Both the position numbers and the translations under genes were made by a program. The notes beneath the pieces were generated by a model. That model was not told the DNA's origin. It saw nothing but the letters and a program-made list of their open reading frames with translations, and ran no database searches. A DNA stretch of 64,000 nucleotides, taken from IMG/VR virus record IMGVR_UViG_3300042402_002641, positions 186,001 to 250,000 of that record, one strand, 5' to 3'. Positions 1 through 32,000 of this stretch are shown here, one piece after another (within the stretch, counting starts at the first letter, position 1; each line of letters begins with the position of its first letter).

Positions 1-1803
1 CATGAGATCCTGTACAGCTTCAAATAATCCACCGAATGCTATTTCTAATCCTGCTACCACACTGTTCACAATACCGAATAAGAAATTAAATGCTTCATCA
101 ACAACGTCAATTACACCTTTGAAATCTTCAAATTTCATGCTGACGCCTTCTAGGGCCTTGCCAATTCTTTCTACCACAGGCCCAAAAATCAGTTGCAGTC
201 CTAGACTGATCTTTTCAAACAGAGCAGATACCACTGCCAGCACTGGTGGAAATACTTTCTGGAAAATATCTACGATAGGACGTATGCCTGCATCTAGAGC
301 TTTTAATGCTGGTACAAGCACTGCATTAGCAATATCTGCTACCAGGCCAACAGCACTGATTAATAGATCTAAAAACCCGCTGTTGGCCAATATGCCTGTA
401 AAAGTATTACTAAGACCAGATAACACTTCTTTCATTTTGTTCATTTTTTCATTGAACTTGTCTGTATTGGCCGCGGCTTTTTTTTGTTCTTCTGTGCCTT
501 CTTTGAGTGCGTTGGCATTTATCTGTTGAGTAGCCGAAAGTTTGTTTACGGTTCCAGCAAGGTCTGCACTAGCAGCGCCTGCGCTCTTTATGCTCTGTAA
601 TTGTTTTCCGCCTTCTGACTTCATGAGATTGTTTAATGCGTTACGTTCTTCTAAGGTCACTGCCTCACCACGCTGCATTTTTTGATTCATTCTCTGTAGC
701 ATGGCCGCACTCTGAGGCATCATGGCCATGAGCTTTTGATTTTCTTCTGTGGTTGCTGTACCAGTGGCCATGATGTCTTTGGCAAAATCTTGTAGACCAT
801 CCGGAAGTCCGGTTGTGACTGCAAGAAAACTTTTTCTCACGCCATCACCTAACCCAGACATTGACGCTTGGAACTGCGCATCTTTGGCCATCGCAGCCAT
901 TTGATTTTCTACTTCTTGGCGACTTTTACCTGTGGCTTTGGCCAGCAGATCTAATTCTTTCATATAGCTTCTAGCACCTTGTGCTAGTTCTGCATTAGAT
1001 TTTTTGCCCTGCAGTCCCTGCAGTTTCATTAGATTACCATAACTGGCCAATCCTTGATTTATTTCTGCTGTGCTAAATCCCAATGCGTATAAGTCGCTGC
1101 TAGTAGATCTCAACTGTTTAGAAACCTTGGCAAAGTTAGCAGCACCGCCTTCTGTGGTAGTTCCAAACGCTCCCATAGCTTGACCATTTTTTGCAATCAA
1201 CGAACCAAATTCTTGTAGATTCATTCCGGCAGTAGTAGCTGCTGCTGAAAACTGACTGATACTACCCCCAAAACTAGATCCAGCGGCTGTAGCAGCACCA
1301 TAGGCAGCTAACATTCTGTCAGCGGCTCCTGCTACCATGGTGAATATTTTTCCTATCACAGGAAGACCGCTGAATATACTAGCAGCGTCTGAAGCATCGT
1401 CTCCCATGCGAGCTAGTGCGTCAGCAGCAGATAATCCTTTTTCAGCAAGGTCTATACCTTGTTTTACAACACCAAATAATGCGCCTGTGGCTAATCCAGC
1501 TCCGCTGGCTATTTTTCCAAGACCTCCGGCTACTACACCTGCAGCTTTACCGACTCCAAATAGTGCTGATCCTGCTGCAGAACCAGCTTTTCCGAATATG
1601 CCACCACCTCCTGCACCACCACCTCCTGCACCACCACCTCCTGCACCACCACCTCCTGCGCCACCACCACCTCCTGCGCCACCACCACCTCCACCGCGGC
1701 CACCTTTCATTACGGCCAGCAGTTCTCGAAGCGTGGATTCAGAAGCGGCATTTTTGGCTTCTACTTGTCCAATTCCTGGAATGTCGATCATTACTGCGGC
1801 CAT
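1..1803 (-). CDS. Tape-measure-like protein, N-terminal 601 codons (continues past left edge)
   Basis: Not in the ORF track because it has no stop in the window. Minus frame from ATG at 1803 reads MAAVMIDIPGIGQVEAKNAASESTLRELL, then a Gly-rich linker, then Ala/Gly-rich helical sequence (ALGFSTAEINQGL, YMKELDLLAKATGKSRQEV). Adjacent to hub chaperone genes, with a TAAATA motif upstream. Confidence 0.75.
   Translation of the reverse strand, partial: MAAVMIDIPGIGQVEAKNAASESTLRELLAVMKGGRGGGGGGAGGGGGAGGGGAGGGGAGGGGAGGGGIFGKAGSAAGSALFGVGKAAGVVAGGLGKIASGAGLATGALFGVVKQGIDLAEKGLSAADALARMGDDASDAASIFSGLPVIGKIFTMVAGAADRMLAAYGAATAAGSSFGGSISQFSAAATTAGMNLQEFGSLIAKNGQAMGAFGTTTEGGAANFAKVSKQLRSTSSDLYALGFSTAEINQGLASYGNLMKLQGLQGKKSNAELAQGARSYMKELDLLAKATGKSRQEVENQMAAMAKDAQFQASMSGLGDGVRKSFLAVTTGLPDGLQDFAKDIMATGTATTEENQKLMAMMPQSAAMLQRMNQKMQRGEAVTLEERNALNNLMKSEGGKQLQSIKSAGAASADLAGTVNKLSATQQINANALKEGTEEQKKAAANTDKFNEKMNKMKEVLSGLSNTFTGILANSGFLDLLISAVGLVADIANAVLVPALKALDAGIRPIVDIFQKVFPPVLAVVSALFEKISLGLQLIFGPVVERIGKALEGVSMKFEDFKGVIDVVDEAFNFLFGIVNSVVAGLEIAFGGLFEAVQDLM
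1601..1696. repeat. In-frame tandem repeat (4 x 15 bp CCACCACCTCCTGCR plus 2 x 18 bp variants) encoding a poly-Gly/Ala linker
   Basis: Read directly from the sequence; encodes (AGGGG)n on the minus strand. Confidence 0.95.
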
Positions 1804-2793: not shown

Positions 2794-2948
2794 CGATAAA
2801 AAAAGACTGTCTAAAACTCTGTTGGTACATGCGAGGACTATCCTACAATGAAGTCGTCAACATGAGTTGGGACGAACGTGAGATAATTGGAGAGATTGTT
2901 GCAGAAAATCTCGAAACAACTAAAAAATCAGGACTGCCTTTCTTTTAG
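2718..2948 (+). CDS. gp51-like hub assembly module, probably expressed as a -1 frameshift extension of the gp26-like protein
   Basis: LCWYMRG.SY.E..NMS..ERE resembles short gp51-like chaperone segments. The track start at 2670 lacks an RBS and lies inside the upstream gene. Confidence 0.6.
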   Translation, partial: FRRKISKLTLPEILRESDNLDKEARSIKKDCLKLCWYMRGLSYNEVVNMSWDEREIIGEIVAENLETTKKSGLPFF

Positions 2949-3190
2949 AGTTTGTTATACATCTTTTTAATCAATGACATTTGTCTATTGTCTAAAGGTT
3001 GACCGTTAATAATACTCGCCAATATCTTTTTTGTATCTCTAGGATCTAATATAGAAAACACAGATTGTGTTGTATCAACAGACGGTGCAGAAGTTGCAGA
3101 GGTTGATACCGTACTAGGGCCAGGAGCAGTTTTAGCATATCCTTTTTTAAAACTGTCTACAAAACCGTCGTTTAAATCTCGAATTCTCAT
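2945..3190 (-). CDS. Small putative internal virion protein (MRIRDL N-terminus)
   Basis: 81 aa, ATGA-coupled to the upstream gene; shares N-terminal and KKGY motifs with neighbours. Confidence 0.55.
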   Translation of the reverse strand: MRIRDLNDGFVDSFKKGYAKTAPGPSTVSTSATSAPSVDTTQSVFSILDPRDTKKILASIINGQPLDNRQMSLIKKMYNKL

Positions 3191-4221
3191 TTTACAAATA
3201 CACTAGCGGTTCCCTTGGCCAGTGCTGATTCGAACATTCTGCGCTTGTGTATTTCCAGCTTCTGTGCAAATATTTCATTGAGGCTTTTTCCACGATGTAC
3301 TAGACTCTTTGTTTCTGCGGCTGCTTTGATTGCTAGTTTGTCTGACGCTGTTCGTTGGAATCCTGGTTTTGCTAGTGCTGCATCTGCGGCGGCTTTAACG
3401 GCCGGGTCTTTTGCGGGTTTAGACAACTGTTGAGCCACATTAGCAAATGCTCCTTGTCCTGCTGGTGCAGTCGCTGTGGCATCCGCTGCTGGTTCCGCCG
3501 CTGGGGGTTTTGCTGCTGCTAGATTAGGATTACTAGGATCAGCGGTGTTTGTTGCACTGACAGGTGCATTAGCCATAGTATTCGCTGGTGCTGCGGCTGC
3601 TGGCGCTGCTCCTGGCTTAGGTGCCCCTGCCGGTGCTGCTAATGATTTTGTCAACAGTTGCAAAATTCTCTGCTTGCCTTTCTTATCTAACTTATCTACG
3701 TTGGCCTTAACCTGAGCGTAAACAGTTTCTCCGGCTTTGGTTGAAGTTTGCTTATCTACTGCTGCTGTAGTTTTAGCTAACGCTGCGCCTGCTGCGCCTG
3801 TTTGTGGCTTAGCTGGTGCTGTGCCTGCAGGTCCTTGCGCATTGATATCTTGGGTTGAAGGAGCTGCTCCGCCTCCTGCTGCTGGTGCTGCTGCTGCTCC
3901 GCCTCCTGCTGCTGGTGCTGCTGCTGCTCCGCCTCCTGCTGCTGGTGCTGCTGCTGCTCCGCCTCCTGCTGCTGGTGCTTCTGCCGGTGGAGTATACCCA
4001 GGTTTTCCTGCATTAGGATCTGGATCATCTCCTACTACAGCTTTTCCAGACTGATAACCTTTCTTCAATGCTGTGCCAGCACCAACTACTCCGCCAGCTA
4101 CCGCGCCTATGCCTTTGGCAACACCGCCTACAGCTTTGCCTATACCACGGCCCAAGGCTCCTAGAGGGCCTTCGTCTATCTGTTCAAGCTGTGATTCAGT
4201 TAAGATTTCGTTAATTCTCAT
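3187..4221 (-). CDS. Ala/Pro/Gly-rich putative internal virion protein (MRINEILTES N-terminus)
   Basis: 344 aa; [IL]-x-E motifs near the N-terminus, glycine-zipper segment, low-complexity linkers. Confidence 0.6.
   Translation of the reverse strand: MRINEILTESQLEQIDEGPLGALGRGIGKAVGGVAKGIGAVAGGVVGAGTALKKGYQSGKAVVGDDPDPNAGKPGYTPPAEAPAAGGGAAAAPAAGGGAAAAPAAGGGAAAAPAAGGGAAPSTQDINAQGPAGTAPAKPQTGAAGAALAKTTAAVDKQTSTKAGETVYAQVKANVDKLDKKGKQRILQLLTKSLAAPAGAPKPGAAPAAAAPANTMANAPVSATNTADPSNPNLAAAKPPAAEPAADATATAPAGQGAFANVAQQLSKPAKDPAVKAAADAALAKPGFQRTASDKLAIKAAAETKSLVHRGKSLNEIFAQKLEIHKRRMFESALAKGTASVFVK
3863..3979. repeat. In-frame 30-bp tandem repeat x ~4 encoding AAAPAAGGGA
   Basis: Unit GCTGCTCCGCCTCCTGCTGCTGGTGCTGCT read directly. 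Confidence 0.95.
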
Positions 4222-4222
4222 A

Positions 4223-5695
4223 TCAAGCGGTTCCTAGTTGTTTGGTAAGGTAAGCAATCATGCGTTTTCTATCTTTAGTATTTAACTGCGCAATTGACTT
4301 TTTAATTTCTGCATATCCGCCTGTGGCTGCTTGAGCAGCTTGAGGTTCGGGTGCAGCAGAAATTTTTAAATCTGTAAACACTTTATCAACTACTGGTGCT
4401 TCAATGCCGCCATAGTTTAATAAAAATTGTTTGAATTCTTCGCTGTCAGTCGGTGATCCTTCCAACTTCCATGCTGCCAACAGCTTGGCCGATGTGACTT
4501 TTTCAGTGGCTTGTTTGCCTGCCCATGCAGCACCTTTGGCCACTGCGCCTACAGCCTTGCCAGCACCTGCTTTGAGTTTGTCTAAGAATCCTGCTTCAGT
4601 TAGCACACGATTAATAATCATGTAAACCTGGCCTTCACTCAGTGGACGAGTCTGAACATAATAACTTTCTTTTTTATTTTTGTCATCGCTGCCTGTTGAA
4701 GCTGCTACAGCACCTTGAGAAATGGCTTGTCCTGCTCCTGCCATCCCTTTAATCCAGTTTAATAATCCATCATTGGCCAATTGGTCAGCACGAGCGTTAC
4801 CTAATATATCATTAATGGCAGATGCATAGCTTTTGGTGTTAACTTCTCTAGCAATTTTTTGTAGTATATCAAATCCGCCCGGTTCACCGTTGCGAATCAT
4901 ATTCATAGCAGCATTAATACCTTCTGCTTCTTGTGGAAATACATTAACCTTAAATCCTTGAGTCATCTGTTTCCATTCAGTGCCTGGACCAGTTAATGTT
5001 TTAGTAGCTCCCCAAGACACTGTTTCTAAACCAGCGTCCTCTGCTCCAGGAACGGGCAGAGATTCAACACGCATTCCGCCAACAAACTTGCCCAGCATTT
5101 CAAATGCTTTACCAGATAGATAACCTAGAGCAGCAGTTTTAATACCTTTGCCTACGGCAGTGGAAAGTTTTTCACCTTTGATCAGTTCAGCAGCGCCTCG
5201 TAGCACCTGACCAGCAATAGCACCGCCAACTGGTCCACCTGCTAGGGAAGCCAACGCTGTTAGTACACCAATAATTGCTGCACTTTTTCCTGGATTCTCT
5301 TTCATCCAGGATCCTAGACCAGTCAGTTGTTTATCTAGATCAGGAAACTTTGAGCTAACCTTGGCTTTAAGTTGTTCAAATTTTTGATCAGCCATTTTAA
5401 CAGGAGTAGTATCCTGCAGCCACTTACCAACATTGTTGATCACTTCATTGGCTTTTTTAGCTATATCAACTCCAGCTCCTGCAATAGTACGATTAGCACC
5501 ACCTGCTACTGATTGCTTTTCTAACTCGCCGAATACCTGTTTAATCTGATCTGCTGTTAGACTAGCTTCAATAAGAGGCACGAACTCATTGTAAATGCCT
5601 TCTACAATACGTTTTTGTTCAAGAGTTAATCCATCACACGATTCTTTAAGTATCTGTCGATGATTATTATTTTCTAATAGATTTTCAATACGCAT
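4223..5695 (-). CDS. Putative internal virion/ejected protein with hydrophobic glycine-zipper segment (MRIENLLEN N-terminus)
   Basis: 490 aa; AAIIGVLTALASLAGGPVGGAIAG segment; TAAATA motif upstream. Confidence 0.6.
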   Translation of the reverse strand: MRIENLLENNNHRQILKESCDGLTLEQKRIVEGIYNEFVPLIEASLTADQIKQVFGELEKQSVAGGANRTIAGAGVDIAKKANEVINNVGKWLQDTTPVKMADQKFEQLKAKVSSKFPDLDKQLTGLGSWMKENPGKSAAIIGVLTALASLAGGPVGGAIAGQVLRGAAELIKGEKLSTAVGKGIKTAALGYLSGKAFEMLGKFVGGMRVESLPVPGAEDAGLETVSWGATKTLTGPGTEWKQMTQGFKVNVFPQEAEGINAAMNMIRNGEPGGFDILQKIAREVNTKSYASAINDILGNARADQLANDGLLNWIKGMAGAGQAISQGAVAASTGSDDKNKKESYYVQTRPLSEGQVYMIINRVLTEAGFLDKLKAGAGKAVGAVAKGAAWAGKQATEKVTSAKLLAAWKLEGSPTDSEEFKQFLLNYGGIEAPVVDKVFTDLKISAAPEPQAAQAATGGYAEIKKSIAQLNTKDRKRMIAYLTKQLGTA

Positions 5696-5718: not shown

Positions 5719-5725
5719 TATTTAT
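5719..5725 (-). promoter_or_regulatory. Late promoter ATAAATA for the three-gene MRI operon
   Basis: Minus-strand ATAAATA 24 nt upstream of ATG 5695, just after a terminator-like hairpin. Confidence 0.65.
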
Positions 5726-5728
5726 TGT

Positions 5729-5750
5729 AAAAACGAGCTTACGCTCGTTT
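5729..5750 (-). terminator. Intrinsic terminator-like hairpin
   Basis: Minus strand AAACGAGC-GUAA-GCUCGUUUUU: 8-bp stem, GNRA loop, U-tract. Confidence 0.65.
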
Positions 5751-6175
5751 GCGTTTTCGCTTGTCGCTCAACGCATTTTCTTCTTCTTAGAATTGTTTTT
5801 ACAATGATATTGCGAAGCAATTCAAGTATTATGCAGATTGTTCAGTCACACTTTGCCCAGACCGGGCAAAGATAACAGCATTATGCGAGTTGCACAGACC
5901 ACTTCAGCGTTAGAGCATTACAGAGGCGGTCATCCGGTACCTCGAGCTCAGTCTTTATATGACGGCGATGTGTGAATCTACGCTAACAAACTCACACACG
6001 TGGGGTTTTTCTCCCCTCATTTTGCCTTGTTTTTCTTTTCAAATAACCAAATCGCAGGTCTTAGTAGCGATCGTCATCCTTTCGGGTAGTGGTTAAGCAC
6101 CTTTGCGGCAAGGTTTTCCATCCCTGTGTACACGTAGACCAGGTATAGGGCGCACGAAATTAAGCCTGCGCCAGC
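5730..6175 (-). ncRNA. Candidate large structured non-coding RNA, family not recognised
   Basis: 492-nt ORF-free gap in a densely coding genome, tiled by about 12 helices. G-U wobbles and GNRA loops work only on the minus strand. Includes a three-way junction and a possible 7-bp pseudoknot. Confidence 0.65.
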
Positions 6176-6187
6176 TAAAAAACCGCT

Positions 6188-6622
6188 TTATTTTGCCTGA
6201 GATTGTTCTAAAAGACGCTGTCTAAGTATATTTGAACCGCCTACTCTGACGTTTATAATGCCATTATAATAGTCGTCGGATTCTAAAACCCTGCGTTCAA
6301 ACTGCTCTCGAGCTTCTAAGTATGATAGTTCTGCCTTGGATTTGCAAAGGTAAAGTATTTCTCTTGTGAAGTTTTCCGGACCTAATGCTTGGACGTCTGC
6401 GTTTAACCTGTCTGATGAACCATAGTATTCGCGCCAATCGCTTTCTACTACTGATCTTCTTTTAAGTTTTTTGCCTTTGAGTGGGGGTTTAGTACGTTTG
6501 AATTGTGCTAATTTCTTGCCTATGTACTTCTGTCCGGTGGTTTTATTCGTGATTATATAAACAAAGCCAATATAGCCTTCTGGTATTTCGTTTAATATTT
6601 GATTTTGATACGTCCATTGCAC
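6188..6622 (-). CDS. Stand-alone GIY-YIG endonuclease domain protein (Seg-like)
   Basis: GFVY-x9-YIG motif, YYGSS, conserved Glu (YLEA) and YYN; 144 aa with no appended DNA-binding domain. Confidence 0.8.
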   Translation of the reverse strand: MQWTYQNQILNEIPEGYIGFVYIITNKTTGQKYIGKKLAQFKRTKPPLKGKKLKRRSVVESDWREYYGSSDRLNADVQALGPENFTREILYLCKSKAELSYLEAREQFERRVLESDDYYNGIINVRVGGSNILRQRLLEQSQAK

Positions 6623-19600: not shown

Positions 19601-20096
19601 AGAACCTCCCAGCACAGACAGTTTAAGAACAACGTTTGGAGCCAACCTATCTGCGATTAAATCTATCAGTGACGAAATCATTTATCATACAGTAAAATAT
19701 AAGGTGTTGTTTGGTTCAAAAGCAGATCCTAAACTACAGGCCATATTTAAAGTGGTTAAAAATCCTGGACAATCTATTAATGATAACGATCTTAAAGTTC
19801 GAGTTATCTCAGCAATAAACTCATTCTTCGACATTAGCAATTGGGATTTCGGTGATAGATTTTATATGGGTGAACTTACTACCTACATACTAAATTCTAC
19901 AGCACCTGATATCAGTAACATAGTTATATGTCCAAAACAAAGTGGTCAATCATTCGGAAGCCTGTTTGAGATACAGAGCAGATCGGATGAAATTTTAATC
20001 AGTGGAGCCACGGTCACAGATGTTGAGATAGTCACAGCTATCACAGCAGCTGAAGTTGGTTCTGCTATAACCAGTGTGGTATCTACTACCTATTAA
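16689..20096 (+). CDS. gp6: Baseplate wedge subunit, gp6-like (extended, 1135 aa)
   Basis: YDFE.L, FNDY..SS, ENF...A, ARMLSY, FADG.YG..P, ESIDS.R.NAP..Y.TQNRMITAEDY. Confidence 0.85.
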   Translation: MTTTSRQNNLILNQDWTRIYQTFRNADFKSYDFENLRRVIITYLRENYPEDFNDYIESSEYLALIDAVAFLGQSLAFRIDLASRENFIELAETKESVLRIARMLSYNAKRNVAAKGLLKFTSVTTTEDIVDSNGRNLAQQIVSWNDPTNTNWLEQFILVLNSAMADNTEFGRSQGSATIQGIPTEQYRFRTTSTDVPIYSFSKTVAARGMLFELVSTAFKNSENIYEEPPVPGNQLGFVYRNDGTGPASPNTGFFLMFKQGTLALADFGIGVPTPNEKIAIDTADINNDDVWLFSLNSAGAQLEEWTKVSTLVGNNIAYNSVEQNIRNIYAVNTKENDTVDLVFADGVYGNLPQGSFRVFYRTSNGLSYTISPNELRGINISISYFNKSGVEHTLTVGLALQSTVANSAATESIDSVRTNAPAVYYTQNRMITAEDYNLAPLSSSQNIVKIKSINRTSSGISRNFDIIDASGKYSSINVFCDDGYIYKQESEETLGFRFNNRVDVINFLRQSVEPKFTDADVYNFYFTKFDRILFTDNNTVWQSVTSTTPTGYFKNVVDNSLLKVGTYSTSSLKYLLSGALIKFTAPAGLAFKKGKLVAINSQDPEQRDRLWTKVVSVAGDGTNAGRGVLTNGLGAVTFSDAVPTGAVANRIVPRFINDLDAALETEIVNQCSQNLNFGLRYESVSSTWKIVTATNINLTSDFSLGKSGDVTNTNADSSWLVAFVKEADRYVVRLRRLSYVFGSVMQNRFYFDTNEKRYNDQLGAVVKDQVKVLGINTDSGFITELRQDVPFEISDTIKFDDGYESTTEIKLSFQDSDDDGVIDNPDSFEQIVGADTALNYLFFKETVDQYGTTDYQLVDNSDNLILIREKESVVDFTDATTYPNGQLIYFYTIDEDVVKAVNRSTNTFDLDRSYRANIGRRNLKFQYIHNASVDRRIDPSSSNIIDVFLLTRSYDESYRIYLAGGTATAPEPPSTDSLRTTFGANLSAIKSISDEIIYHTVKYKVLFGSKADPKLQAIFKVVKNPGQSINDNDLKVRVISAINSFFDISNWDFGDRFYMGELTTYILNSTAPDISNIVICPKQSGQSFGSLFEIQSRSDEILISGATVTDVEIVTAITAAEVGSAITSVVSTTY

Positions 20097-20097
20097 T

Positions 20098-23000
20098 ATG
20101 TCAGATAAATTTTTTCCTTTCAGTAAACTACCTATAAGAAAATCAGTAGAACTTCTACCTAAAGTTTTTCAGACAGAAGCTAACGATAAATTTCTTGCAG
20201 GCGTAGTAGATCCTTTAGTTCAACCAGGATTATTGGATAAAATTACAGGATATGTCGGTCGAAGGTTTGGCAAAACTTATAATGGTAACGATCTATATCT
20301 AGATACAGATGCTACATTAAGAAGTGCTTATCAGTTAGAACCTGGAGTGATATATCGAAATCAGGATAAGATTGAAAATTTCTATGATTACATTGATTTT
20401 AAAAATCAATTAAAATTCTTTGGTAATACAGATGAACGTGACGACAAACTTACTAGCCAGGAGCACTATGCCTGGAATCCGCCTATTGCCTGGGACAAGT
20501 TCATCAATTATCGCGAATATTATTGGGTTCCCGGCGGGCCGCCTAGTGTCTCAATATATGGACAAAGCGCCACAGTCAACAGTACATATAAAGTAGTATT
20601 GAGTACAACTGCAAACAGTTTTGTGTTTACTCCAGATGCCTATACCAATAATCCTACTCTAACATTATATCGAGGACAGACATATAAATTTAGAGTTAAT
20701 GCTCCTGGTGAAGGATTTAGTATTCGTACGAATTATGACACAGGAAGTTTGATATTTAAACCTAATTATCCATATCTTGCAGGCAATCTAGCAGTGTATG
20801 ATACTAAACTATATAGAGCACGCCGAGACATAAATCCCGCAGACGGCAGTTCCATCACATTAGATAGTGAAGATTGGGAATATCTCGAACCAGCTGCATC
20901 CGGCGCAGCCTTAGAATATAAAAAAGGTGTAATTAACAACGGTACTGAAAATGGCACAGTGACCTTCACAGTGCCCTACGATGCTCCTGATACATTATAT
21001 TATCAAGGTCTAATTAATCCTGATGCTTTTGGTAGATTTGTTATAGCTGATATTGAATCTAATACATATCTCAATGTAGATAAAGACATTGTTGGCAAGA
21101 GTGAATATACTAGTAGTACTGGTATTACACTAAGCAATGGAATGGTTGTTGAATTTCAAGGTACCGTTATTCCAGAAAAATATAGTCAGGAAACATGGGT
21201 GGTCGAAGGAGTTGGAAAAGCTATAACATTGACAAAATTCTCTGATCTTATAGTTCCAGTGTTAACGGCCACAGTACCTGAAGTATTATTTGATAACGCA
21301 GGTTTTGACACAGAACCTTTTGACGATGCTACCGCATATCCTACCTTTAAAGATTACATCACTATAGCTAAAGACAGTATTGATTCTAATCCTTGGTCAA
21401 GATATAATCGTTGGTTCCATAGAAGTGTATTAGAAACAGCTTATACTCTGCGAGGCGAAGATTTTCCTGCAGAAGAATCTACTAGAGCTAAACGACCTAT
21501 TATAGAATTTTCAGCTAATCTGCAGTTATTCAATCACGGATCAGCAGCTAAACAAACTGTAGACTATCTCGATGATTATACCACTGATGTATTATCTCGC
21601 ATTGAAGGCAGCACAGGTTACAACGTCGATGGAGAGTTTTTATTTGAAGGTGCTAGGATATTGGTTATTGCTGATACCGATAGATTAACCAACAACAAAA
21701 TATATGAAGTAAAATTCATTCGACACATAAACACTACTCAGATACATCTAGTAGAAACAGAAGATAGTGACAGTATATTAGGCCAAGGGGTGTTGGTGCG
21801 TCGAGGTTCCAAAAACGGTGGAAAGATGTTTCACTTCAACGGAACTAATTGGATACCAAGTCAAGCAAAAACTTCAGTAAATCAGGCTCCACGGTTTGAC
21901 GTATTTGATTCGACAGGTGTAAGTTTTAGCGATATCGAAAAATACACCACTAGTACATTTACAGGCACAAAAATTATAAGCTATAAGCTAGGGTCAGGAA
22001 GAATAGATACTGAATTAGGTTTTAGTTTAAGTTATTTGAACATTGACAATGTTGGTGATATAGAATTTAATTTCGACTGGGATTCGGATATTGCAGAATA
22101 CACAGAAACACGAACACCTAAAAGCGTTAAAATATCTACCGGATACTATAAATTTAATCCCGATGCAGTTTATGCTAATAATTGGTTACTGGCTGGTTCA
22201 GAATTTATGCAACCTATAGTAGATAGTCAATTAGTAATCAGTGATACAAATACGTTGACCTTTGATACGATAGACTGGTCTGCGTTGAAGACAGACCCAA
22301 TAATCAACATTTACATAAACGGCACAAAGTATGCAGGAACGTACACTAGGACGGAGAACACATTTGAGTTTCCCCTCACTCTGTCTGCCAAAGACGCTGT
22401 AGTTCTAAAAGTTATTACAGATCTTGATCCCGATCAAGGTTATTATGAAATACCAGCAGGTCTAGAAAAGAATCCATTTAATACAGAACTGACATCTTTC
22501 ACATTGGGCCAGGCTGTAGACCATATTGTTTCGGCTGTAGAATTTGATTCTAAGGTTACAGGTAATATACCGGGAGTTAGTAATCTAAGAGACAGCGATG
22601 GATATCAAAAACATGCCAAACGTTTTCTGAAGCATTCTGGTATAGCACCACTGGCTATTATGACGCTGTGTGATAAAACACATAATATTATCAAATCAAT
22701 ACAATATGCTAAAAAAGCCTACACAGATTTTAAAAATAATTTTGCTGCTAGGGCAGTAGAAATTGACTATAATGATAGTGTACCAGATTTTGTTGATGAT
22801 GTTATTAACAGTCTAGCAAAAAATAAAACTGCGGTGAGTCCGTTCGCAGACAGCGATATGCTAGGATCAGGTGCTTATACCGTTGTAACATATACTGTAG
22901 AAGATGTAGGAATAAAAACATTTTCATTAGGCGAAAAATTTGATCTAACCAGTCTCAGCAAACGTGCTGTTTATGTATATCTAAACGGCAGTCAACTTTT

Positions 23001-26000
23001 AAATGCAAGAGACTACTCATTCAATTCAACCTTTGGTTTTGTACAATTGAGTGTAAATCTTGAAGAAAATGATCTGGTCGAAATACGTGAATATGTTTCT
23101 ACAGCTACTAGTCACATTCCACCAACTCCTACCAGCATGGGACTGTATAAAAAATACACTCCTATACGTTTCATAGACGATACCTTCCAAGAACCTCGTG
23201 AAGTCATACAAGGCCACGATGGTAGTATTACAGCGGCGTATGGCGATTTCAGAGATGACTTATTACTAGAACTTGAGTATCGTATCTATAACAATATCAA
23301 GCAGGAATATGATTCTTCTATCTTTGATATTGATTCTATTTTAGGTGGGTATTACGGTGTTGGTCTTTACACAAAACCTCAATTAGATAATATTGTTAAT
23401 CAAGAGTTTTTAAAATGGGTACAAAACACCAACATAAATTATACTTTAAACTCGTATTTTGACAGTGAGAATAGTTTTACCTATACCTATTCTAAAATGT
23501 CAGATCCTCTAAAAACGCAGACATTGCCTGGATATTGGAGAGGAGTGTATCAATGGTTCTATGACACAGATCGCCCACATCGCTGCCCATGGGAAATGTT
23601 AGGATTTTCGCAAGAACCTACCTGGTGGCAATCACAGTATGGTGCCGCACCATATACACGCAACAATTTATTGCTCTGGGAAGATCTAGAGAATGGGCAT
23701 ATTAGGCAAGGTAACAGAGCTGGCCGCTATGATAGATATAAGCGTCCGGGATTGATAAATCATATCCCTGTAGACGGCGATGGGTTATTATTAAGTCCAC
23801 TAGATAGTGGGCTCGCCCAGGATTTTTCACTTATCAATAATCAAGGTACTTTTGTGCTAGGCGATATCGGTCCAGTAGAATATGCTTGGAGATCCAGTTC
23901 CGAATGGCCGTTTGCAGTTATAATGGCCATGTGTTTAATGAAACCTTTTGAATTCATTACAGATAACTTTGATCGTTCTAGAACTACCACTAACATATTA
24001 GATCAGACAGTTAACGGCACAACCTCTTTGTTCAGCACATTGGGCGAAATTGCACCAATAACATTGTCAGATTCGTATATAGGTCTATTAAAATATATAG
24101 CGGCCTATGTGAAATCAAGAGGTATCTCACAGGACAGTATTATAGAAAAAATTAACAATCTTGATGTTTCTTTGAGTTTTAGAATGAGTGGATTTGTTGA
24201 TCAACAACAACAGAAATTTTTGTTAGATTCTAAAAATCCATCTGCCACTACCAGCAGTATATATGTACCTGCAGAAAATTATGATATTATTTTTAATGTT
24301 GGCGCTCCGGTAGCTACTGTGGCTATTAGCGGAGTCATATTTGAAAAAACTCAAGGCGGTTGGATAGCCACAGGCTATGACGACATACATCCTTATTTTG
24401 AATATCATCAGGCTTTACCAAGTCAGAGAGATCCGGTAATATCTATAGGCGGAGTTAGCGAAACATTTTTAGACTGGACCTTAGATAAAAATTACAACAA
24501 CGGTACCTTGGTAAGATATTCTAATGATTTTTATAGGGCGTTACGAACACATAATAGCGGAAATACATTTGATAAGTCAGTGTGGCAAAAACTCAGCGAC
24601 ATTCCTAAGATAGGAGCAGTTGAAGCACAACGTCGCCGTACATTTAACACACTGGCAGTAAAACGTATTAGTTATGGCACACTGTTCACTACCGTTCAAC
24701 AGGTAGTAGATTTTCTATTAGGATATGAAAGTTATTTAAAAAGTCTAGGATTTATATTTGATAGATATGATCCAGTAAATCAGGTCAGTCAAGACTGGCT
24801 CAGCAGCGCCAAAGAATTTATGTTTTGGACCAAACACAACTGGGAACTAGGGTCGTTAATAGCCATTAGCCCTATGGCTGAAAAAGTGGATGTTGAGGTA
24901 CCTGTGGGAGTAGCCGATAACATACTTGATGGGTTTTATGACTATCAGGTACTAAAGGGTGACGGCAAACCTCTAGAGCCAAGATTCATAAATGTAAATC
25001 GCAGTTTTCAAAAAATTACGGTAGAAACCACTAACACCGATGAAGGTGTATTTTTCTTAAAATTAAACTATGTTCTTAAAGAACATGTTACAGTATTTGA
25101 CGATCGTACAGTATTCAATGATATAATTTATGATAAGACCACTGGCTATCGTCAAGGCAGAATTAAAGTACAGGGTTTTCGCACAGTAGATTGGGACGGA
25201 GATTACACAAGCCCGGGATTCTTATTTGATAATGTTAACATACAGACCTGGCAGCCATTCCGAGATTACAGGCTAGGCGACATAGTATCTTATAAAAGTT
25301 TTAATTGGACTAGTTTAAGAAATCAACTTGGTTCTGAAACCTTTAATGATTCTGTTTGGACCAAATTAGATAGCACACCTCAAAAACAGCTGATTCCTAA
25401 CTTCGACTACAAGATCAAACAATTTAGCGATTATTTTGAAACATCGTCAGAAGGCACAAATCAAAATCAACGGGAATTAGCCAGACACACAATAGGATAT
25501 CAACAGAGAGATTATTTGAATAATCTGGCCGAAGATCCGGTGAGTCAATTTCAGTTGTATCAAGGATTCATACGTGAAAAGGGATCAGCTAACGCTATTA
25601 CAAAAATATTTGGTAAACTTAGTCGATCAGGATCTGATAGTGTAACTCTGAATGAAGAGTGGGCGTTTTTATTAAGCAGAATAGGAGGCACTGATCAACT
25701 CACAGAAATAGAAATACAGATAGAAAAAAATAAAATAAAATTTAATTCTCAGGTATTAACTATAGAGTCTGGAGTTCGTGGTGTTGTTTCAGATCTTAAT
25801 TATAGAATTAATATCAACGACTTTACAGTACCACCGATACCGTATGTAACAAATATTAATCCAACTTCTTTAGAAATAAATCCAAGTTTCACCGCAGGAT
25901 ATGTGTACGAGAATCAATATGAACACGTGATAGCCACACAGACAGAATTAACTACACTAGATATCTCCACAGTTAAAGAAAATGATCATATATGGATAAC

Positions 26001-29000
26001 GTTTTATAGAGATTCCTGGACAGTGCTTAGAGCTAACCAAGTTGAAATGCTATCTGTAATTACTGTTGAAAGGTTCGACGATACAACTGTAACAGTTACT
26101 TTTAATCGACCGCATGTATTCTTAGTCGATACATATGTGGGATTTAGAAACATAGTTAATCTGCAGGGATTTTTTAAAATAATAACAGTGACTAACACCA
26201 CAGTTAGTATTGAAATTGATGCTGACAATGAAGATCCGGAAATAGATTCTAGTACTATAGTAAATCCTACAATACTTACTGAAAGTAGATTTGATAATTA
26301 TCAGATTCTAGATAGAGGAACATCTGCGCTGTTATATAACGGTGCTAGATTGTTTATAGATAACAACGGTAACGACCTATGGGAAGTCATAGAAAAGCAA
26401 AAACAATACACCGCTAATTCTATCACTGATTACGCTACAACTAGTCCTATCAATGCCGGTAAGAAAGTAATATATGACACAGTAAACTCTCAGCTACTTG
26501 TTAGCATACCTGGGTCTGGCATAGTAAACGTTTACGCAGAAAGTTCTACAGGACTAGTACTAAAACAAATCATTTCTCCCCCTAATGGATTCTTCGCCAA
26601 TGCATTAGGATCTTTCGGTAATGCGATGGCACTAAGTCCTGATGGTAAGGTGCTGATAGTTGGTGCAGCCGAAGCCAGCGGTGTAGCTAGTGCATTCCGA
26701 GGTCCGTGGGCCACAGATCAGTTTTATCAACAAGATGAGATAGTATTATATGGCGGCAGACTCTACCGAGCTAAAAATCCTAACACCGTAGGTGTAGACA
26801 ATAGCACCGAAATAGCTATTAACACAGATGATTGGGAGCTAGCCACTATTATACCGGCGCTTGAATCAGGAGTTAATACCGGCCTGTATCAACAGGGAAT
26901 GGTAGCAGTATACACCTATACGAATGGCAGATTTTTTAACACTGCGGCTTTTGTTAGTCCAAGACCTGCTGACAATGAAAAATTTGGCAGCGAAATAACT
27001 TTATCTGTCAGCGGCAGCTCTTATTATATGGCAGTATCTGCTACAGGTTCCTATAATAATACTGGCCGAGTGTACCTGTTTAAATTCAACGGAACAGCAT
27101 GGAGTCATTTAGAAAATCCTATGTACACAGGAGTATATGACTTTCAAAAATCCTACAAGGCAGGAGAAATTGTATGGCAGGCCGCCCAGGATCCCGTGGT
27201 TGAGGCTGCGAGAGGGAATTTGTGGATGAATCTAGAAGATTCGACCACAGACGGCAGTACGATAACTATCCAATCACAGGGATGGTTGAAAGTCAGCGAT
27301 ATCAGCACAAATTGTTCTCTGCCAACTACAATATCAGTAGAGGATGATGGATCGACCTTAGAATTTGCAGTAACAGGTCTATTGAATGAAACACAAATGG
27401 CAGAACTAGTCAAACAGGGTGATAAGTTTGGATCTAGTATGGCCATGAACAGAGACGGCAGTATATTAGTTATAGGTGCTCCGGATGCAGACGGACAATA
27501 TTTTGCAAACTATCGAGGTCTATGGAGAGGCGATGTAGAATATGTAGAAGGGGAAGTTGTGAGATTCAAGGATCTCACAGCACCGGGAGATTCTTATCAA
27601 TATTATCGATTGGGTGATGCATTCCTTGGAGCAGATTCTACCTATAGAAGCTATAATGAAGATCCATCAGACAGTGCAAACTGGCAGGTAGTAGGAGACA
27701 GCACCACAGAGTCTAGCGGTAAGGTGTGGGTCTATGCTCGCACCGCAGGCGATGTCTATGAACTAAAACAAATGATCAATGCAGCATCGATCAGCTCATT
27801 TTCAGATATAGATTCTGGATTAGTTATTAGTACAGGTGACCAGTTTGGATTTGCAATGGACATGGATTTTACTGGTAATACCTTGGTTGTTTCTAGTCCT
27901 AGATCAGATATTAATTATCAGGATCAAGGCAGTGTATATGTGCTAGAATTAGATAGTAACATTATTGAATACAGGGTGAAACAGCGCCTAGAAAGTTTCG
28001 AAACATACCCTAATGAATATTTTGGATACGGAGTTTCGGTGAGTCCGGATGCAGCAAAAATCGCTGTAGGCGCACGAAACGCTTCTAACGATATTCCTGT
28101 TGCATTCGATATTCTTCTCGGTACAATTTTTGATCTCGGAACTACTAGATTTAGCTCAGCTCAAGGTTACACCGGCGGAGTTTACATATTTGATAAAAAA
28201 GATCAGATATTCTTTCTCACCGAAAAACTGCAGGAAGTCTTTTCACCAGACGAAGCTTTCGGTTCTAGTGTAGACTGTGTAGGATCTTATGTGGCAGTGG
28301 GATCTCCGTACTATAGAGCTCCTGTGCTCGACTCAGAAGGAGAGCTAACCTACGAAGGTTCTTACATAGGAAATGCTAGATTGTTTAAGAAAGATTCTAC
28401 ACTGTCTTCTTGGAATATTTTAAACACACAGCAGCCTGTGGTAGATATACGAAAAATTCGGAGTATAGAATACTATGACAATGTGCAGAACATCAAAATA
28501 CAAGACCTTGATTTTATAGATTCTGCCAAAGGTAAAATATTAAACTCTGCCGAACAAGAAATTAAATTTAAGACACCCTATGATCCTGCAGTGTATACTA
28601 TAGGAACTGATCAGGTAGTTACGGATCCTGCCATAGCCTGGTACGAATCTAATGTTGGAAAATTATGGTGGAATATAGCTGCTGCAAAATGGATCTACGC
28701 CGAACAGGGTGATACTGCTTTTAGAACAGGTAATTGGAATCAATTAGCCAAGGGCAGCGATATTGCCGTGTATGAATGGATACAAAGTGTGTTATTGCCT
28801 AATGAATGGGCAGCAGTAGCAGACACCAACGAAGGACTGGCACAAGGAATTAGCGGACAACCTCTTTATCCCAACAACGATGCATATAGTGTAAAACAGA
28901 TCTTGAATCCAACTACTGGACAGGTACAAGAAACTTTCTATTTTTATTGGGTAGAAAATAAAACAGTGGTACCTGCGAATATGGCAGATAGAACAAAATC

Positions 29001-32000
29001 GGCAGCAGAAGTAGCAAACATTATTGCAAATCCTGTGGGCACAGGCACCTCGTTTATAGCACTAATAGCCTCTGATAAATTTGTTTTGTATAATGCAAAA
29101 TCAGTTATGTCATCAGATACTGCGTTGATTAATATCAAATATAGAAATGATTTGGCATCACTCAGACCTATACACAGTGAATATCAGCTATTGACAGAAT
29201 CTGTTGCAGACAGTGTGCCAACTTTACAACTAGAAAATAAATGGATCGACAGCCTGGTAGGAACTGATACACAGGGAAACAGAGTACCAGACACAGCGTT
29301 GCCTGCTAAACAAAAATATGGCATAAATTTTAGACCGCGTCAAAGCATGTTTGTCGACAGACTAACAGCATTAAAGTTAGCAATAATCAACATCAACGAA
29401 GTATTGACCAATCAACCGTTCGCTGACCTTATAGACTTTACAAATCTAAATGCTAAAGATCCTGCACCAGCCGAAATATTAAATCTATATGATGTTACAG
29501 TTGATACCGAGATTGATCTACAGACTGTAGGCACAGTAAGAACTAAACAAGCGGTACTTCGGGCTAATCTTGTTGATGGTGAATTAGATACTGTTGACAT
29601 AGTCGATCCTGGATTCGGCTATAGAGTAGTGCCACCGATAGAGGTAGAAGGTGATGGGTTAGGAGCTAAAATAGCGGTAACGCTAGATAATCAAGGAAGA
29701 ATAGCCACGATTACAGTGTTAAACAGAGGTAAACGGTATCGAACATTGCTGGCCAAGGTAAGGAACTTTTCAGTGCTGGTGTTGAATGATTCTACTATAG
29801 ATAATTTTTGGAGTGTCTATGCCTGGGATGATGTGAGAAAGGTATTTTTCCGCAGTCAATCTCAAGCCTACGATACTACCAAATATTGGAATACTGTGGA
29901 TTGGTATCTTTCAGGGTACAATCAAGATTCACCTATCACTAGAGAAATTTTAAGTGTGTTTCAAGAACCACAATATCAAATTTCACCAGGAGAATTAATC
30001 AGAGTCAAAGAATACGGAGCCGGGGGTTGGGCGATATTTGAAAAAATCAACAACGCAGGTACAACTTTTTCAGATAGGTTTAAATTAGTGGCTAGACAGG
30101 ACGGAACTTTGCAATTAAAATCTTCTCTATATGATACCACGGTGGCAGGTATAGGATTTGATAACGCACAGAGTTTTGACAACACTACCTATGATATTTC
30201 AAATTCAATAGAATTAAGAAATATTTTACAGGCTGTAAAAAAAGATATTTTTGTTGCAGATTATGCTATAGAATGGAATAAATTATTTTTCTCTAGCATA
30301 AGATATACTTTGTCAGAACAACAATATGTTGATTGGGTTTTTAAAACTAGTTTCTTAAACGCTACACACTCTGTAGGCAGTTTTGAACAAAAGCTAAATT
30401 ATAAAAATGATAATCTTGAAAGTTATCAACAATATATAGATGAAGTTAAACCTTTTAGAACTACAGTAAGAGAGTATGTGAGTCGTTACAATACTCCCGA
30501 GCCCTATCAATCAGCTATTGCAGATTTTGACCTTGCTCCGAATTATTCAGTTATAGATGGTAAAGTAGTTCCTATAACCTTTGATCGTGCAGAATTAACA
30601 CAGTACCCTTGGAAATGGTGGACAGACAATAACGGTTACTCAGTTACGGAAATTTTATTATATGAGTACGGCACCCTATATACCACTGTGCCTAGGGTGG
30701 TCATAGAAGGTAACGGTTCAGGAGCTACAGCGCAGGCCTATATATCTAACGGTCGTGTATCTGGTATTAAAATGTTGACCACAGGCAGCGGCTATACACA
30801 AACGCCCACAGTAACCTTAGTAGGGGGAAATTCCAACGACGGAACACAGGCTAAGGCTACAGCGGTGTTAGGCAATACTAAGATTAGAACTTTTAATCTC
30901 ACAGTGAAATTTGATCGTGTTAGCAAAACAGGTGATTATCAATCATATACACAAAATCAAATATTTGTAGCTACAGGCAGCACAGCGGTATTTGAACTAG
31001 GGTACGCTCCTACTAGAGACAAAACTAAAATATCAATATTTAAAAATAATCAATTAGTCTTAACCAGCGAATATACTATCAGCTTATATTATTTGGACAC
31101 TGATAATTATTCTTTGTTGAGAGGAAAAATTATATTTAATATAGCTCCAGTTAACGGCGATGTGATCACTGTAAACTATGAAAAAAATATCGAATTATTA
31201 TCTGCTATAAACAGAATAGATCGATTCTACACTCCCGTTTCCGGTATGGTAGGCAAAGAACTTAACCAACTTATGACCGGAATAGATTTTGGAGGTGTAC
31301 AGATACAAGGTACTACTTTTGAAGTTACTGGAGGATGGGATGCGCTGCCATGGTTTACAGACAACTGGGACAGCGTAGAAGCCGCCAGCGACTATTACGT
31401 AGTTCATGATGGTAGCACTAATACAGTAACTCTTCCGTACATTCCAGCGGCCGGACAAGAAATTAACATTTATATCAAGCGAGCAGGAGAAACACAGACT
31501 CGAAGAATAGACGATCCGGCATATAATGATCAGATAGATTCATCTACAAGTGCAAATCCTAATGCAGAAATGCCTACTTTTATAGGCGATGGCGTTAACA
31601 ATATTGTAGAAATTGGAGATTATCTATCAACACAAAGTGGGGATACATTAATTTTCCGTCCTTCAGAAAGCGATGGATCAGTAACAATCACCGATGATAA
31701 TTTGCTAGATACCAAACTCAGCGGAGGCACATTATCGGCCATAGATAATATATATGTCACCGCCAGAGGGACCACAGCAGAAGAAATAGCTATAACCGGT
31801 GGTAAGTTTATTGAACCTGATCACGTGCCTGCTCCGGAAGAAAATATTCCTGGACAGGTTATGGACAGTGTGTCTATTAAAGTGTTTCAATCGACCCCGA
31901 CAGGGTCAGCGGCCCTGCAATCTAAAATTGTCAAAGGTAACGGAATCGATACCGACTTTGATATTGGACAACCTATTGTTGAAAACAACTCAGTAATTGT

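What the first reader, a model, noticed from the sequence alone, without database searches (positions are those of the whole stretch)
2945..5695. Late three-gene operon sharing an MRI-x-[DEN]-[LI] leader and modular motifs: candidate packaged/ejected proteins
Seen: N-termini are MRIENLLE, MRINEILTE and MRIRDLND. [IL]-x-E-[SAG] sites recur (ILKES, LIEAS, LSEG, LTEAG, LTES, IDEG). The 490-aa and 344-aa proteins share a helix, YAEIKKSIAQLNTKDRKRMIAYLTKQL versus YAQVKANVDKLDKKGKQRILQLLTKSL, and both carry glycine-zipper segments. Established: T4 internal proteins use a short N-terminal capsid-targeting sequence and are cut by the gp21 protease after [IL]-x-E. Inference: this is a phage-specific capsid-targeting signal on proteins processed in the head, possibly forming a membrane conduit on ejection.
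Basis: partly seen in the sequence, partly recalled or inferred. Interest (0 to 1): 0.6.

Follow-up and report, generated by a model that had tools for sequence, protein, structure and literature searches.

The report
Capsid-targeting-like leader on hypervariable phage proteins
Three adjacent late genes of an uncultured 280-kb lake phage related to T4 share a short N-terminal leader that closely resembles the peptides T4 uses to load proteins into its head and then cuts off, so they are probably fast-evolving proteins packed with the DNA; this rests on sequence analysis only.

Summary
Three translationally coupled minus-strand ORFs of 490, 344 and 81 aa sit behind one late-promoter-like ATAAATA site. 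They share the leader, a C-terminal helix (hhalign E 4e-5) and glycine-zipper segments.

In about 20 distinct related cassettes from IMG/VR, nearly every gene, including highly divergent third-gene variants, starts with M-[RK]-[IL]-x-x-[ILV]-[ILV]-x-E. The rest of each protein diverges far faster than the flanking genes.

The phage encodes a T4-type S77 prohead protease. Its capsid protein has L-S-E|S at the position of T4 gp23's cleavage site. The 344-aa leader nearly matches the 10-residue gp24 propeptide that T4 gp21 removes.

Conserved glutamates mostly sit in [LIVM]-x-E context. Leaders are acidic and the mature parts basic. Four unrelated genes elsewhere in the genome carry the same leader (6 of 331 gene starts against 0.19 expected).

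Best reading: T4-style capsid-targeting propeptides on a hypervariable, mosaic set of internal head proteins (confidence about 0.55). The membrane-conduit idea is untested. The 81-aa protein has Asp where Glu is needed, so it may be targeted but not cut. There are no homologues in cultured phages, no fold assignment and no proteomics. Verdict: a new variant of a known kind.

The parts
4223..5695 (-). p490 CDS (490 aa): leader, N-terminal module, then a p344-like C-terminal module
   Evidence: No Pfam or PHROG hit. At least 1189 metagenomic relatives, all unnamed.
3187..4221 (-). p344 CDS (344 aa): leader, glycine zipper, Ala/Pro/Gly-rich linkers, shared helix, basic C-terminus
   Evidence: It is present in every related cassette.
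2945..3190 (-). p81 CDS (81 aa): leader with Asp at the expected cutting position, and a conserved C-terminal motif shared with the hypervariable third-gene variants
5719..5725 (-). ATAAATA late-promoter-like site, 23 nt upstream of the p490 ATG
   Evidence: The T4 late promoter TATAAATA is established knowledge. The late sigma factor is confirmed.
5729..5748 (-). Hairpin plus T-run just upstream of the promoter-like site; probably ends the upstream transcript
   Evidence: Read directly from the sequence. The consensus scan did not list it.
5567..5695 (-). p490 residues 1-43: acidic N-terminal region with L-L-E8 and the conserved L-K-E18|S, I-V-E32|G and L-I-E43|A sites
   Evidence: conserved Glu with L/I/V at -2. 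(pI 5.0).
4171..4221 (-). p344 residues 1-17: leader with invariant E9 (L-T-E|S) and E17 (I-D-E|G)
   Evidence: Synonymous codon variation within the leader.
3167..3190 (-). p81 residues 1-8: leader ending L-N-D. Orthologues have L-H-E|G or I-N-E|A.
5198..5290 (-). p490 residues 136-166: conserved hydrophobic glycine-zipper segment (Kyte-Doolittle 19-residue maximum 1.74)
4631..4642 (-). p490 invariant L-S-E354|G site, at the boundary of the C-terminal module
4520..4621 (-). p490 residues 359-392: internal copy of the p344 N-terminus (leader-like segment plus glycine zipper)
   Evidence: hhalign E 1.9e-6, aligned from Met-1 of p344.
4226..4333 (-). p490 residues 455-490: shared C-terminal helix motif
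   Evidence: hhalign E 4.1e-5.
3625..3738 (-). p344 residues 162-199: the same helix motif
4057..4170 (-). p344 residues 18-55: E-G-P junction and amphipathic glycine zipper, the best conserved part after the leader
3863..3984 (-). 30-bp tandem repeat, 4.1 copies, encoding an Ala/Gly/Pro unit inside p344; its length varies among orthologues

Best explanation
The three genes form a late-transcribed, translationally coupled cassette of paralogous, mosaic, fast-evolving basic proteins. Each starts with a short acidic leader that works like the capsid-targeting sequence of T4 internal proteins and the gp24 propeptide.

Proposed mechanism (inferred):
1. The leader brings the protein into the scaffolding core of the assembling prohead.
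2. The phage's S77 (gp21-type) prohead protease then cuts after Glu in [LI]-x-E. The predicted cuts are at E8 (and possibly on to E43) and E354 in p490, and at E9 and/or E17 in p344.
3. The basic mature parts stay in the head with the DNA and probably leave with it at infection.
4. p81 in this window has Asp at the cutting position, so it would be loaded but probably not trimmed.

Shown: gene arrangement, promoter-like motif, leader conservation and portability, motif statistics, presence of the protease, and alignment with known T4 cleavage sites.

Inferred: targeting, cleavage, presence in the virion, ejection, and any role after entry.
For: 1. **Leader conservation.** The leader is conserved in almost all cassette genes of about 20 distinct related cassettes, including highly divergent third-gene variants. 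In the p344 family M1, E9 and E17 are invariant. The leader scores 0.81 majority identity, against 0.54 for the rest of the protein.
2. **Protein-level constraint.** Codons inside the leader vary synonymously.
3. **Portability.** An unrelated 370-aa family keeps the leader and an invariant E|A-N junction in about 70 orthologues. So does an 86-aa basic protein, whose residues after the leader copy the capsid protein's predicted cleavage junction. Genome-wide, 6 of 331 N-termini match, against 0.19 expected.
4. **Protease and known sites.** An S77 prohead protease is encoded 5 kb outside the window (87 bits). The capsid protein's L-S-E41|S aligns with T4 gp23 L-T-E65|A. The first ten residues of T4 gp24 nearly match the p344 leader. 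T4 cleavage positions are from PMC9958956.
5. **Glu context.** Conserved glutamates lie in [LIVM]-x-E context in 5 of 10 cases (p490 family) and 4 of 4 cases (p344 family), against a background of 0.15-0.23.
6. **Charge.** Leaders are acidic (pI 4-5) and mature parts basic (pI 9-10), as in T4 internal proteins (PMC8442874).
7. **Divergence.** The cassette diverges or is swapped in genomes whose flanking genes are 96-100% identical. This parallels the T-even internal-protein loci, where only the targeting sequence is conserved (PMC3012670).
8. **Virion link.** In the cultured relative PA5oct, a 73-aa protein that starts with the same leader type and is encoded next to the portal gene is flagged as detected in virions by mass spectrometry.
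9. **Late expression.** Late-promoter-like motif and late sigma factor.
Against: - There is no proteomic or any other experimental evidence for these proteins.
- No homologue exists in 50,697 cultured phage records.
- The cassette lies beside the baseplate-hub and tape-measure-like genes, not inside the head module.
- In the p490 family the leader is no better conserved than the rest (0.60 against 0.65), and 7 of 33 members lack it.
- p81 here has Asp at P1.
- [LIVM]-x-E near an N-terminus is common: 36% of control proteins have one.
- T4 internal proteins have no glycine zippers.
- The AlphaFold2 model of p490 is poor (pLDDT 46.6).
- A second PA5oct leader-bearing gene (gp213) was not flagged as detected in virions.
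Confidence: 0.55

Rival explanations
1. The proteins are prohead core or scaffold components. They enter by the same leader but are cut into fragments and expelled before DNA packaging, like T4 gp22, gp67 and gp68. On this reading they are not delivered to the host.
For: p490 carries several conserved [LI]-x-E|[SGA] sites (E18, E32, E43, E354), which suits multi-site degradation. In T4 most core proteins are degraded and leave the head (PMC8442874, PMC9958956). The proteins are poorly ordered in prediction.
Against: They are basic rather than acidic coiled coils. A separate scaffold (364 aa) and an acidic 281-aa core-like protein already sit in the head module. p490 is dispensable in several relatives. 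Hypervariability fits an interface with the host better than an assembly role.
Confidence: 0.18
2. The proteins are tail or baseplate-lumen proteins associated with the tape-measure-like protein. On this reading the shared N-terminus is simply inherited among paralogues, or serves tail assembly, and the head protease plays no part.
For: The cassette lies next to the baseplate-hub gene (phrog_150) and the 998-aa tape-measure-like gene. The p344 glycine zipper weakly resembles one in that protein (BLASTP E 0.024 for the single comparison).
Against: The same leader occurs on unrelated proteins elsewhere in the genome. In the 86-aa protein it is fused directly to a copy of the capsid protein's cleavage junction. 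The invariant Glu residues and their L/I at -2 are unexplained by paralogy alone. The tape-measure-like protein itself lacks the leader.
Confidence: 0.15
3. The proteins are late but non-virion, acting for example in membrane-related steps of lysis or in superinfection exclusion. On this reading the leader is a conserved helix of unrelated function.
For: There are glycine-zipper segments and one borderline hydrophobic stretch. No structural-protein family matches.
Against: There is no signal peptide or clear transmembrane topology. The acidic leader with invariant [LI]-x-E, and its match to T4 gp24's cleaved propeptide, would be coincidence. In PA5oct, a protein with this leader type is flagged as a virion protein.
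Confidence: 0.07

Closest known systems
[quoted passage not shown]
   Same: A short N-terminal leader ending in [LI]-x-E. Basic, non-conserved mature parts. Only the leader is conserved among relatives. The locus is hypervariable. A gp21-family protease is present in the genome (PMC3012670, PMC9026906, PMC8442874).
   Different: There is no sequence homology to T4 internal proteins. The leader is one residue shorter and has a different sequence. The cargo proteins are much larger, with glycine zippers, low-complexity linkers and mosaic modules. One of them carries an internal copy of the leader. Packaging and ejection are untested.
T4 gp24 vertex-protein propeptide (first 10 residues, removed by gp21)
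   Same: Near-identical pattern, K-I-N-E-L-L-R-E|S against R-I-N-E-I-L-T-E|S, with Ser after the cut (cleavage position from PMC9958956).
   Different: gp24 is a capsid-shell protein of the Gp23 family. The cassette proteins are not. No second Gp23-family gene was found in this 280-kb contig, which is estimated 79% complete.
Inner-body and ejection proteins of phiKZ-like giant phages (phiKZ, 201phi2-1, SPN3US)
   Same: Many head-internal proteins are processed after Glu by a gp21-related protease, with redundant sites in the propeptides. The sets are paralogous and fast-evolving (PMC9026906, PMC5694885).
   Different: It is a different phage lineage. The motif differs, and their propeptides are usually longer. 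No homology was detected.
Ejection proteins of podophages (P22 gp7/gp16/gp20, T7 gp14/15/16)
   Same: They are head-stored proteins proposed to act at the membrane after ejection (PMC8402733).
   Different: Those phages lack a contractile tail. This phage has a full T4-type baseplate. No homology was detected, and only one borderline hydrophobic segment is present.

Membership tests
T4-type CTS-bearing internal head proteins | N-terminal propeptide of about 10-19 residues that is conserved while the mature part varies | tested here: met
   The feature is weaker in the p490 family.
T4-type CTS-bearing internal head proteins | Propeptide ends in the gp21 cleavage motif [LI]-x-E | tested here: met
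   p490 has L-L-E8. p344 has L-T-E9 and I-D-E17, with both Glu invariant. p81 in this window has L-N-D8, so the feature is not met for p81; its orthologues have Glu.
T4-type CTS-bearing internal head proteins | gp21-family (Peptidase_S77) prohead protease encoded by the phage | tested here: met
   PF03420 matches at 87.4 bits, over the cut-off, at G000 180810-181259.
T4-type CTS-bearing internal head proteins | Basic mature protein | tested here: met
   Mature parts have pI 9.0-10.0; leaders have pI 4.1-5.0.
T4-type CTS-bearing internal head proteins | Sequence homology to IPI, IPII or IPIII | tested here: not met
   No Pfam or PHROG hit. No tblastn hit in cultured phages.
T4-type CTS-bearing internal head proteins | Leader necessary and sufficient for packaging; protein present in virions and ejected | not testable with these tools
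   This needs virion proteomics or reporter fusions. The protease-plus-leader complex prediction gave no verdict.
Prohead scaffold or core proteins (gp22, gp67, gp68 type) | Encoded within the portal-protease-scaffold-capsid module; acidic, coiled-coil | tested here: not met
   The cassette lies about 6-10 kb from that module, beyond the tape-measure-like and hub genes. The proteins are basic.
Tape-measure or tail-lumen proteins | Homology to, or shared modules with, the tape-measure protein | tested here: inconclusive
   Only a 54-residue glycine-zipper match, E 0.024 for a single comparison. p490 gives E 0.12.
Membrane-conduit ejection proteins | Clear transmembrane or membrane-inserting segments | tested here: inconclusive
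   One conserved segment in p490 has a Kyte-Doolittle score of 1.74. The other zippers are amphipathic. The model has low confidence, and the fold search gave nothing above noise.

The most novel reading that the evidence does not exclude
A widespread clade of lake jumbo myophages uses one portable leader to load a varied, rapidly exchanged cargo into the head. The cargo would include glycine-zipper proteins that act on the host membrane during DNA entry, and enzymes such as the leader-bearing nucleotidyltransferase-like protein. That would amount to a capsid-delivered effector repertoire, unlike the small DNA-binding internal proteins of T4.
Probability: 0.15. Interest if true: 0.75.

Novelty: new variant of a known kind. 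Interest (0 to 1): 0.5.

Why it matters
If the leader is a working capsid-targeting signal, it gives a simple sequence rule for listing the proteins that abundant, uncultured lake jumbo phages carry into their hosts. In this genome that list has at least seven candidates. Such proteins are prime candidates for counter-defence and entry functions.

The finding would also show that the T4 targeting-and-trimming logic extends to a distant jumbo lineage with quite different cargo. The leader itself might serve to load foreign proteins into such heads, as the T4 sequence does.

The cassette is swapped between otherwise near-identical genomes, which marks it as a likely interface with the host.

Tried and rejected
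- **Family scans.** Pfam and PHROG scans of the three proteins gave nothing.
- **Cultured phages.** blastn and tblastn against 50,697 cultured phage records gave nothing for any of the three.
- **Large protein search.** It found at least 1189 relatives of p490. All are metagenomic and unnamed, so it gave no functional lead.
- **ESM Atlas look-alikes.** Only viral hypothetical clusters came back.
- **Structure.** The AlphaFold2 model of p490, built on a 28-row alignment, had mean pLDDT 46.6 and pTM 0.23. A wide PDB fold search on it gave a best Z of 6.1 among helical matches, which is below noise for helical models. No fold is assigned.
- **Complex prediction.** Prohead protease plus p344 residues 1-60 gave no verdict (score 0.00). 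This is neither support nor evidence against binding.
- **Leader as a DNA-level signal.** I considered that the leader might be a recombination or translation signal. This was rejected as the main cause, because Ile, Thr, Ser, Leu and Arg codons vary synonymously while the residues stay.
- **Leader confined to the three genes.** My first MRI-only scan suggested this. A broader pattern found four more genes.
- **The 188-aa protein with a T4-CTS-like N-terminus.** I considered counting it as support. Its PA5oct homologue is a virion protein but lacks the [LI]-x-E site and sits in the neck/tail module, so I do not lean on it.
- **Metatranscriptomes.** Contigs from four freshwater RNA runs cover parts of p490 and p344 of relatives, and the upstream RNA element. 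Contigs in RNA libraries do not prove transcription.
Full report
**Context**

The window is bases 186001-250000 of a single 280,019-bp viral contig. CheckV estimates it as 79% complete. Its SbcC-like gp46 homologue is 46-49% identical to those of the jumbo phages PA5oct, Atu_ph07 and Phosso.

Around the finding lie:
- a gp55-like late sigma factor, SbcD and SbcC;
- a conserved GIY-YIG-like gene;
- a baseplate-hub gene (phrog_150);
- a 998-aa tape-measure-like gene;
- just outside the window, the portal, an acidic core-like protein, an S77 prohead protease, a scaffold and a Gp23-family capsid protein.

Near-identical DNA occurs in lake-water metagenomes of more than 15 studies.

**The observation**

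The three ORFs and their N-termini are as described. They are translationally coupled.

An ATAAATA site lies 23 nt upstream of the first ATG, preceded by a hairpin and T-run. ATAAATA is strongly enriched just upstream of genes: 25 of 49 copies against about 1.7 expected. It precedes the hub gene, baseplate genes and a 2511-aa ORF. The T4 late promoter is TATAAATA (established knowledge). "Late operon" is therefore a reasonable reading, though it rests on a motif.

**Relatives**

IMG/VR holds about 60 related loci, and the large protein search found at least 1189 p490 relatives, all unnamed. There are about 20 distinct cassettes between the same flanking genes. Their architecture is: GIY-YIG-like gene, an RNA element, an optional p490-like gene, a p344-like gene that is always present, and a hypervariable third gene. 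Sometimes there is a fourth or fifth gene.

Nearly every cassette gene begins M-[RK]-[IL]-x-x-[ILV]-[ILV]-x-E. This includes third-gene variants that share only the leader and a short C-terminal motif with p81.

In the p344 family M1, E9 and E17 are invariant and R2, I3, L7, G18 and P19 nearly so. The leader is much better conserved than the rest (0.81 against 0.54). Codons inside it vary synonymously, so the constraint is on the peptide.

The cassette is far more divergent than its flanks. Examples:
- flanks 96-98% identical, against 79, 66 and 79% for the three proteins;
- flanks 98-100% identical with p490 essentially replaced.

**Modularity**

The shared helix is significant at profile level (E 4.1e-5). 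p490 residues 359-392 align with p344 residues 1-41, starting exactly at its Met-1 (E 1.9e-6). The C-terminal third of p490 is therefore a compact p344-like unit with an internal, fossil leader, preceded by the invariant L-S-E354|G site. Some third-gene variants carry the same glycine zipper. The three genes are mosaic paralogues.

**Link to the head protease**

- The genome encodes a Peptidase_S77 protein (87 bits).
- When the N-termini are aligned with T4 sequences taken from the T4 record, the capsid protein's L-S-E41|S falls on T4 gp23's L-T-E65|A. The first ten residues of T4 gp24 read almost like the p344 leader, with Ser after the Glu in both.
- T4 gp21 removes 65 residues from gp23 and 10 from gp24 (PMC9958956).
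- Among well-conserved glutamates, 5 of 10 in the p490 family and 4 of 4 in the p344 family have L, I, V or M two residues before. The background for these residues is 0.23 and 0.15. My rough binomial estimate for 9 of 14 at 0.2 is about 4e-4.
- Leaders are acidic and mature parts basic, as for the highly basic T4 internal proteins (PMC8442874).

**Portability**

A pattern derived from the cassette matches 6 of 331 called gene starts. The expectation is 0.19, with a maximum of 3 in 2000 simulations, and it matches 0 of 1625 internal Met positions. Because the pattern came from the cassette, the fair count is the four hits outside it, which are still well above expectation.

- One is a 370-aa protein with no family match. 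Its roughly 70 orthologues keep the leader and an invariant E|A-N junction, even where the leader length changes.
- Another is an 86-aa very basic protein. In its roughly 75 orthologues the leader is followed directly by a copy of the capsid protein's post-cleavage sequence.
- The other two are a 168-aa protein and a nucleotidyltransferase-like 239-aa protein.
- In PA5oct, a 73-aa protein encoded next to the portal starts with the same leader type and is flagged as found in virions by mass spectrometry. Its orthologue is present and highly conserved in this clade.

**Interpretation**

[quoted passage not shown] I therefore take the leader as a targeting and cleavage propeptide, and the cassette as hypervariable internal head proteins, with confidence about 0.55.

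p81 in this window has Asp at the cutting position. In T4, Asp there blocks processing but not targeting (PMC9026906).

Fate and function after packaging are open. The alternatives are degradation as core components, a tail-lumen location, or a non-virion role; these are listed as rivals. The membrane-conduit idea rests only on glycine zippers and one borderline hydrophobic segment.

**What did not help**

- No family, cultured-phage or Atlas lead.
- A poor AlphaFold2 model and a fold search at noise level.
- A complex prediction without verdict.
- RNA-library contigs of relatives cover parts of the cassette but do not prove transcription.

**Novelty**

The mechanism proposed is the known T4 one. 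What is new:
- its use in a distant, uncultured jumbo lineage;
- the leader variant;
- the unannotated mosaic glycine-zipper cargo families, one with an internal leader copy;
- a genome-wide set of leader-bearing genes.

All of this is inference from sequence.

Noticed in passing
window 6041-6176, minus strand: There is a strong match to Rfam RF01718 (Polynucleobacter-1 RNA, 98 bits), between the GIY-YIG-like gene and the cassette. The same RNA lies 350-500 nt upstream of the p490-like gene in 9 of 9 related loci tested. Its describers found it in no purified phage (PMC2864571 supplement); here it sits in jumbo-phage contigs. Contigs from 4 of 4 freshwater RNA runs cover it.
   Followed up: partly
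window 6188-6622, minus strand: A 144-aa GIY-YIG homing-endonuclease-like gene is present at the same position in every related cassette, at 57-99% identity. That is unlike a sporadic homing endonuclease.
   Followed up: partly
G000:C1:266291-266551, minus strand (outside the window; L069 2291-2551): An 86-aa, very basic, Pro/Gly/Lys-rich protein has a leader followed at once by a near copy of the capsid protein's sequence after its predicted cleavage site. This is conserved in about 75 orthologues. PA5oct virion protein gp281 contains a similar motif.
   Followed up: partly
G000:C1:48446-49558, 64416-64922 and 91487-92206, all minus strand (outside the window): Three further genes carry the leader: a 370-aa protein, a 168-aa protein and a 239-aa nucleotidyltransferase-like protein (phrog_36119; weak NTP_transf_2 hit). 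Leader conservation was checked only for the 370-aa family.
   Followed up: partly
G000:C1:126801-127367, minus strand (outside the window; L070): A 188-aa protein has first ten residues that closely resemble the T4 capsid-targeting sequence. It is a homologue of PA5oct virion protein gp282, which lacks the [LI]-x-E site and sits beside neck and tail genes.
   Followed up: partly
window 3863-3984: A 30-bp tandem repeat (4.1 copies, 98% matches) lies inside p344 and encodes an Ala/Gly/Pro unit. This region varies in length among orthologues.
   Followed up: partly
window 20074-33876, plus strand: A single 4600-aa ORF lies in the baseplate/fibre region. PA5oct has a comparably giant virion structural protein, gp355.
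   Followed up: no
window 1-1803 with L068 18807-20000, minus strand: The 998-aa tape-measure-like protein has a long poly-Gly/Ala run near its N-terminus and a glycine zipper weakly similar to that of p344 (E 0.024). It is itself among the more variable genes of the region.
   Followed up: partly
L068 16854-17093, minus strand (G000 about 182854-183093): A small protein encoded just after the portal gene is the orthologue of PA5oct gp333 (E 2e-16) and is 77-100% conserved across the clade. The PA5oct protein starts with the leader type discussed here; this one starts with a related hydrophobic-x-E N-terminus.
   Followed up: partly
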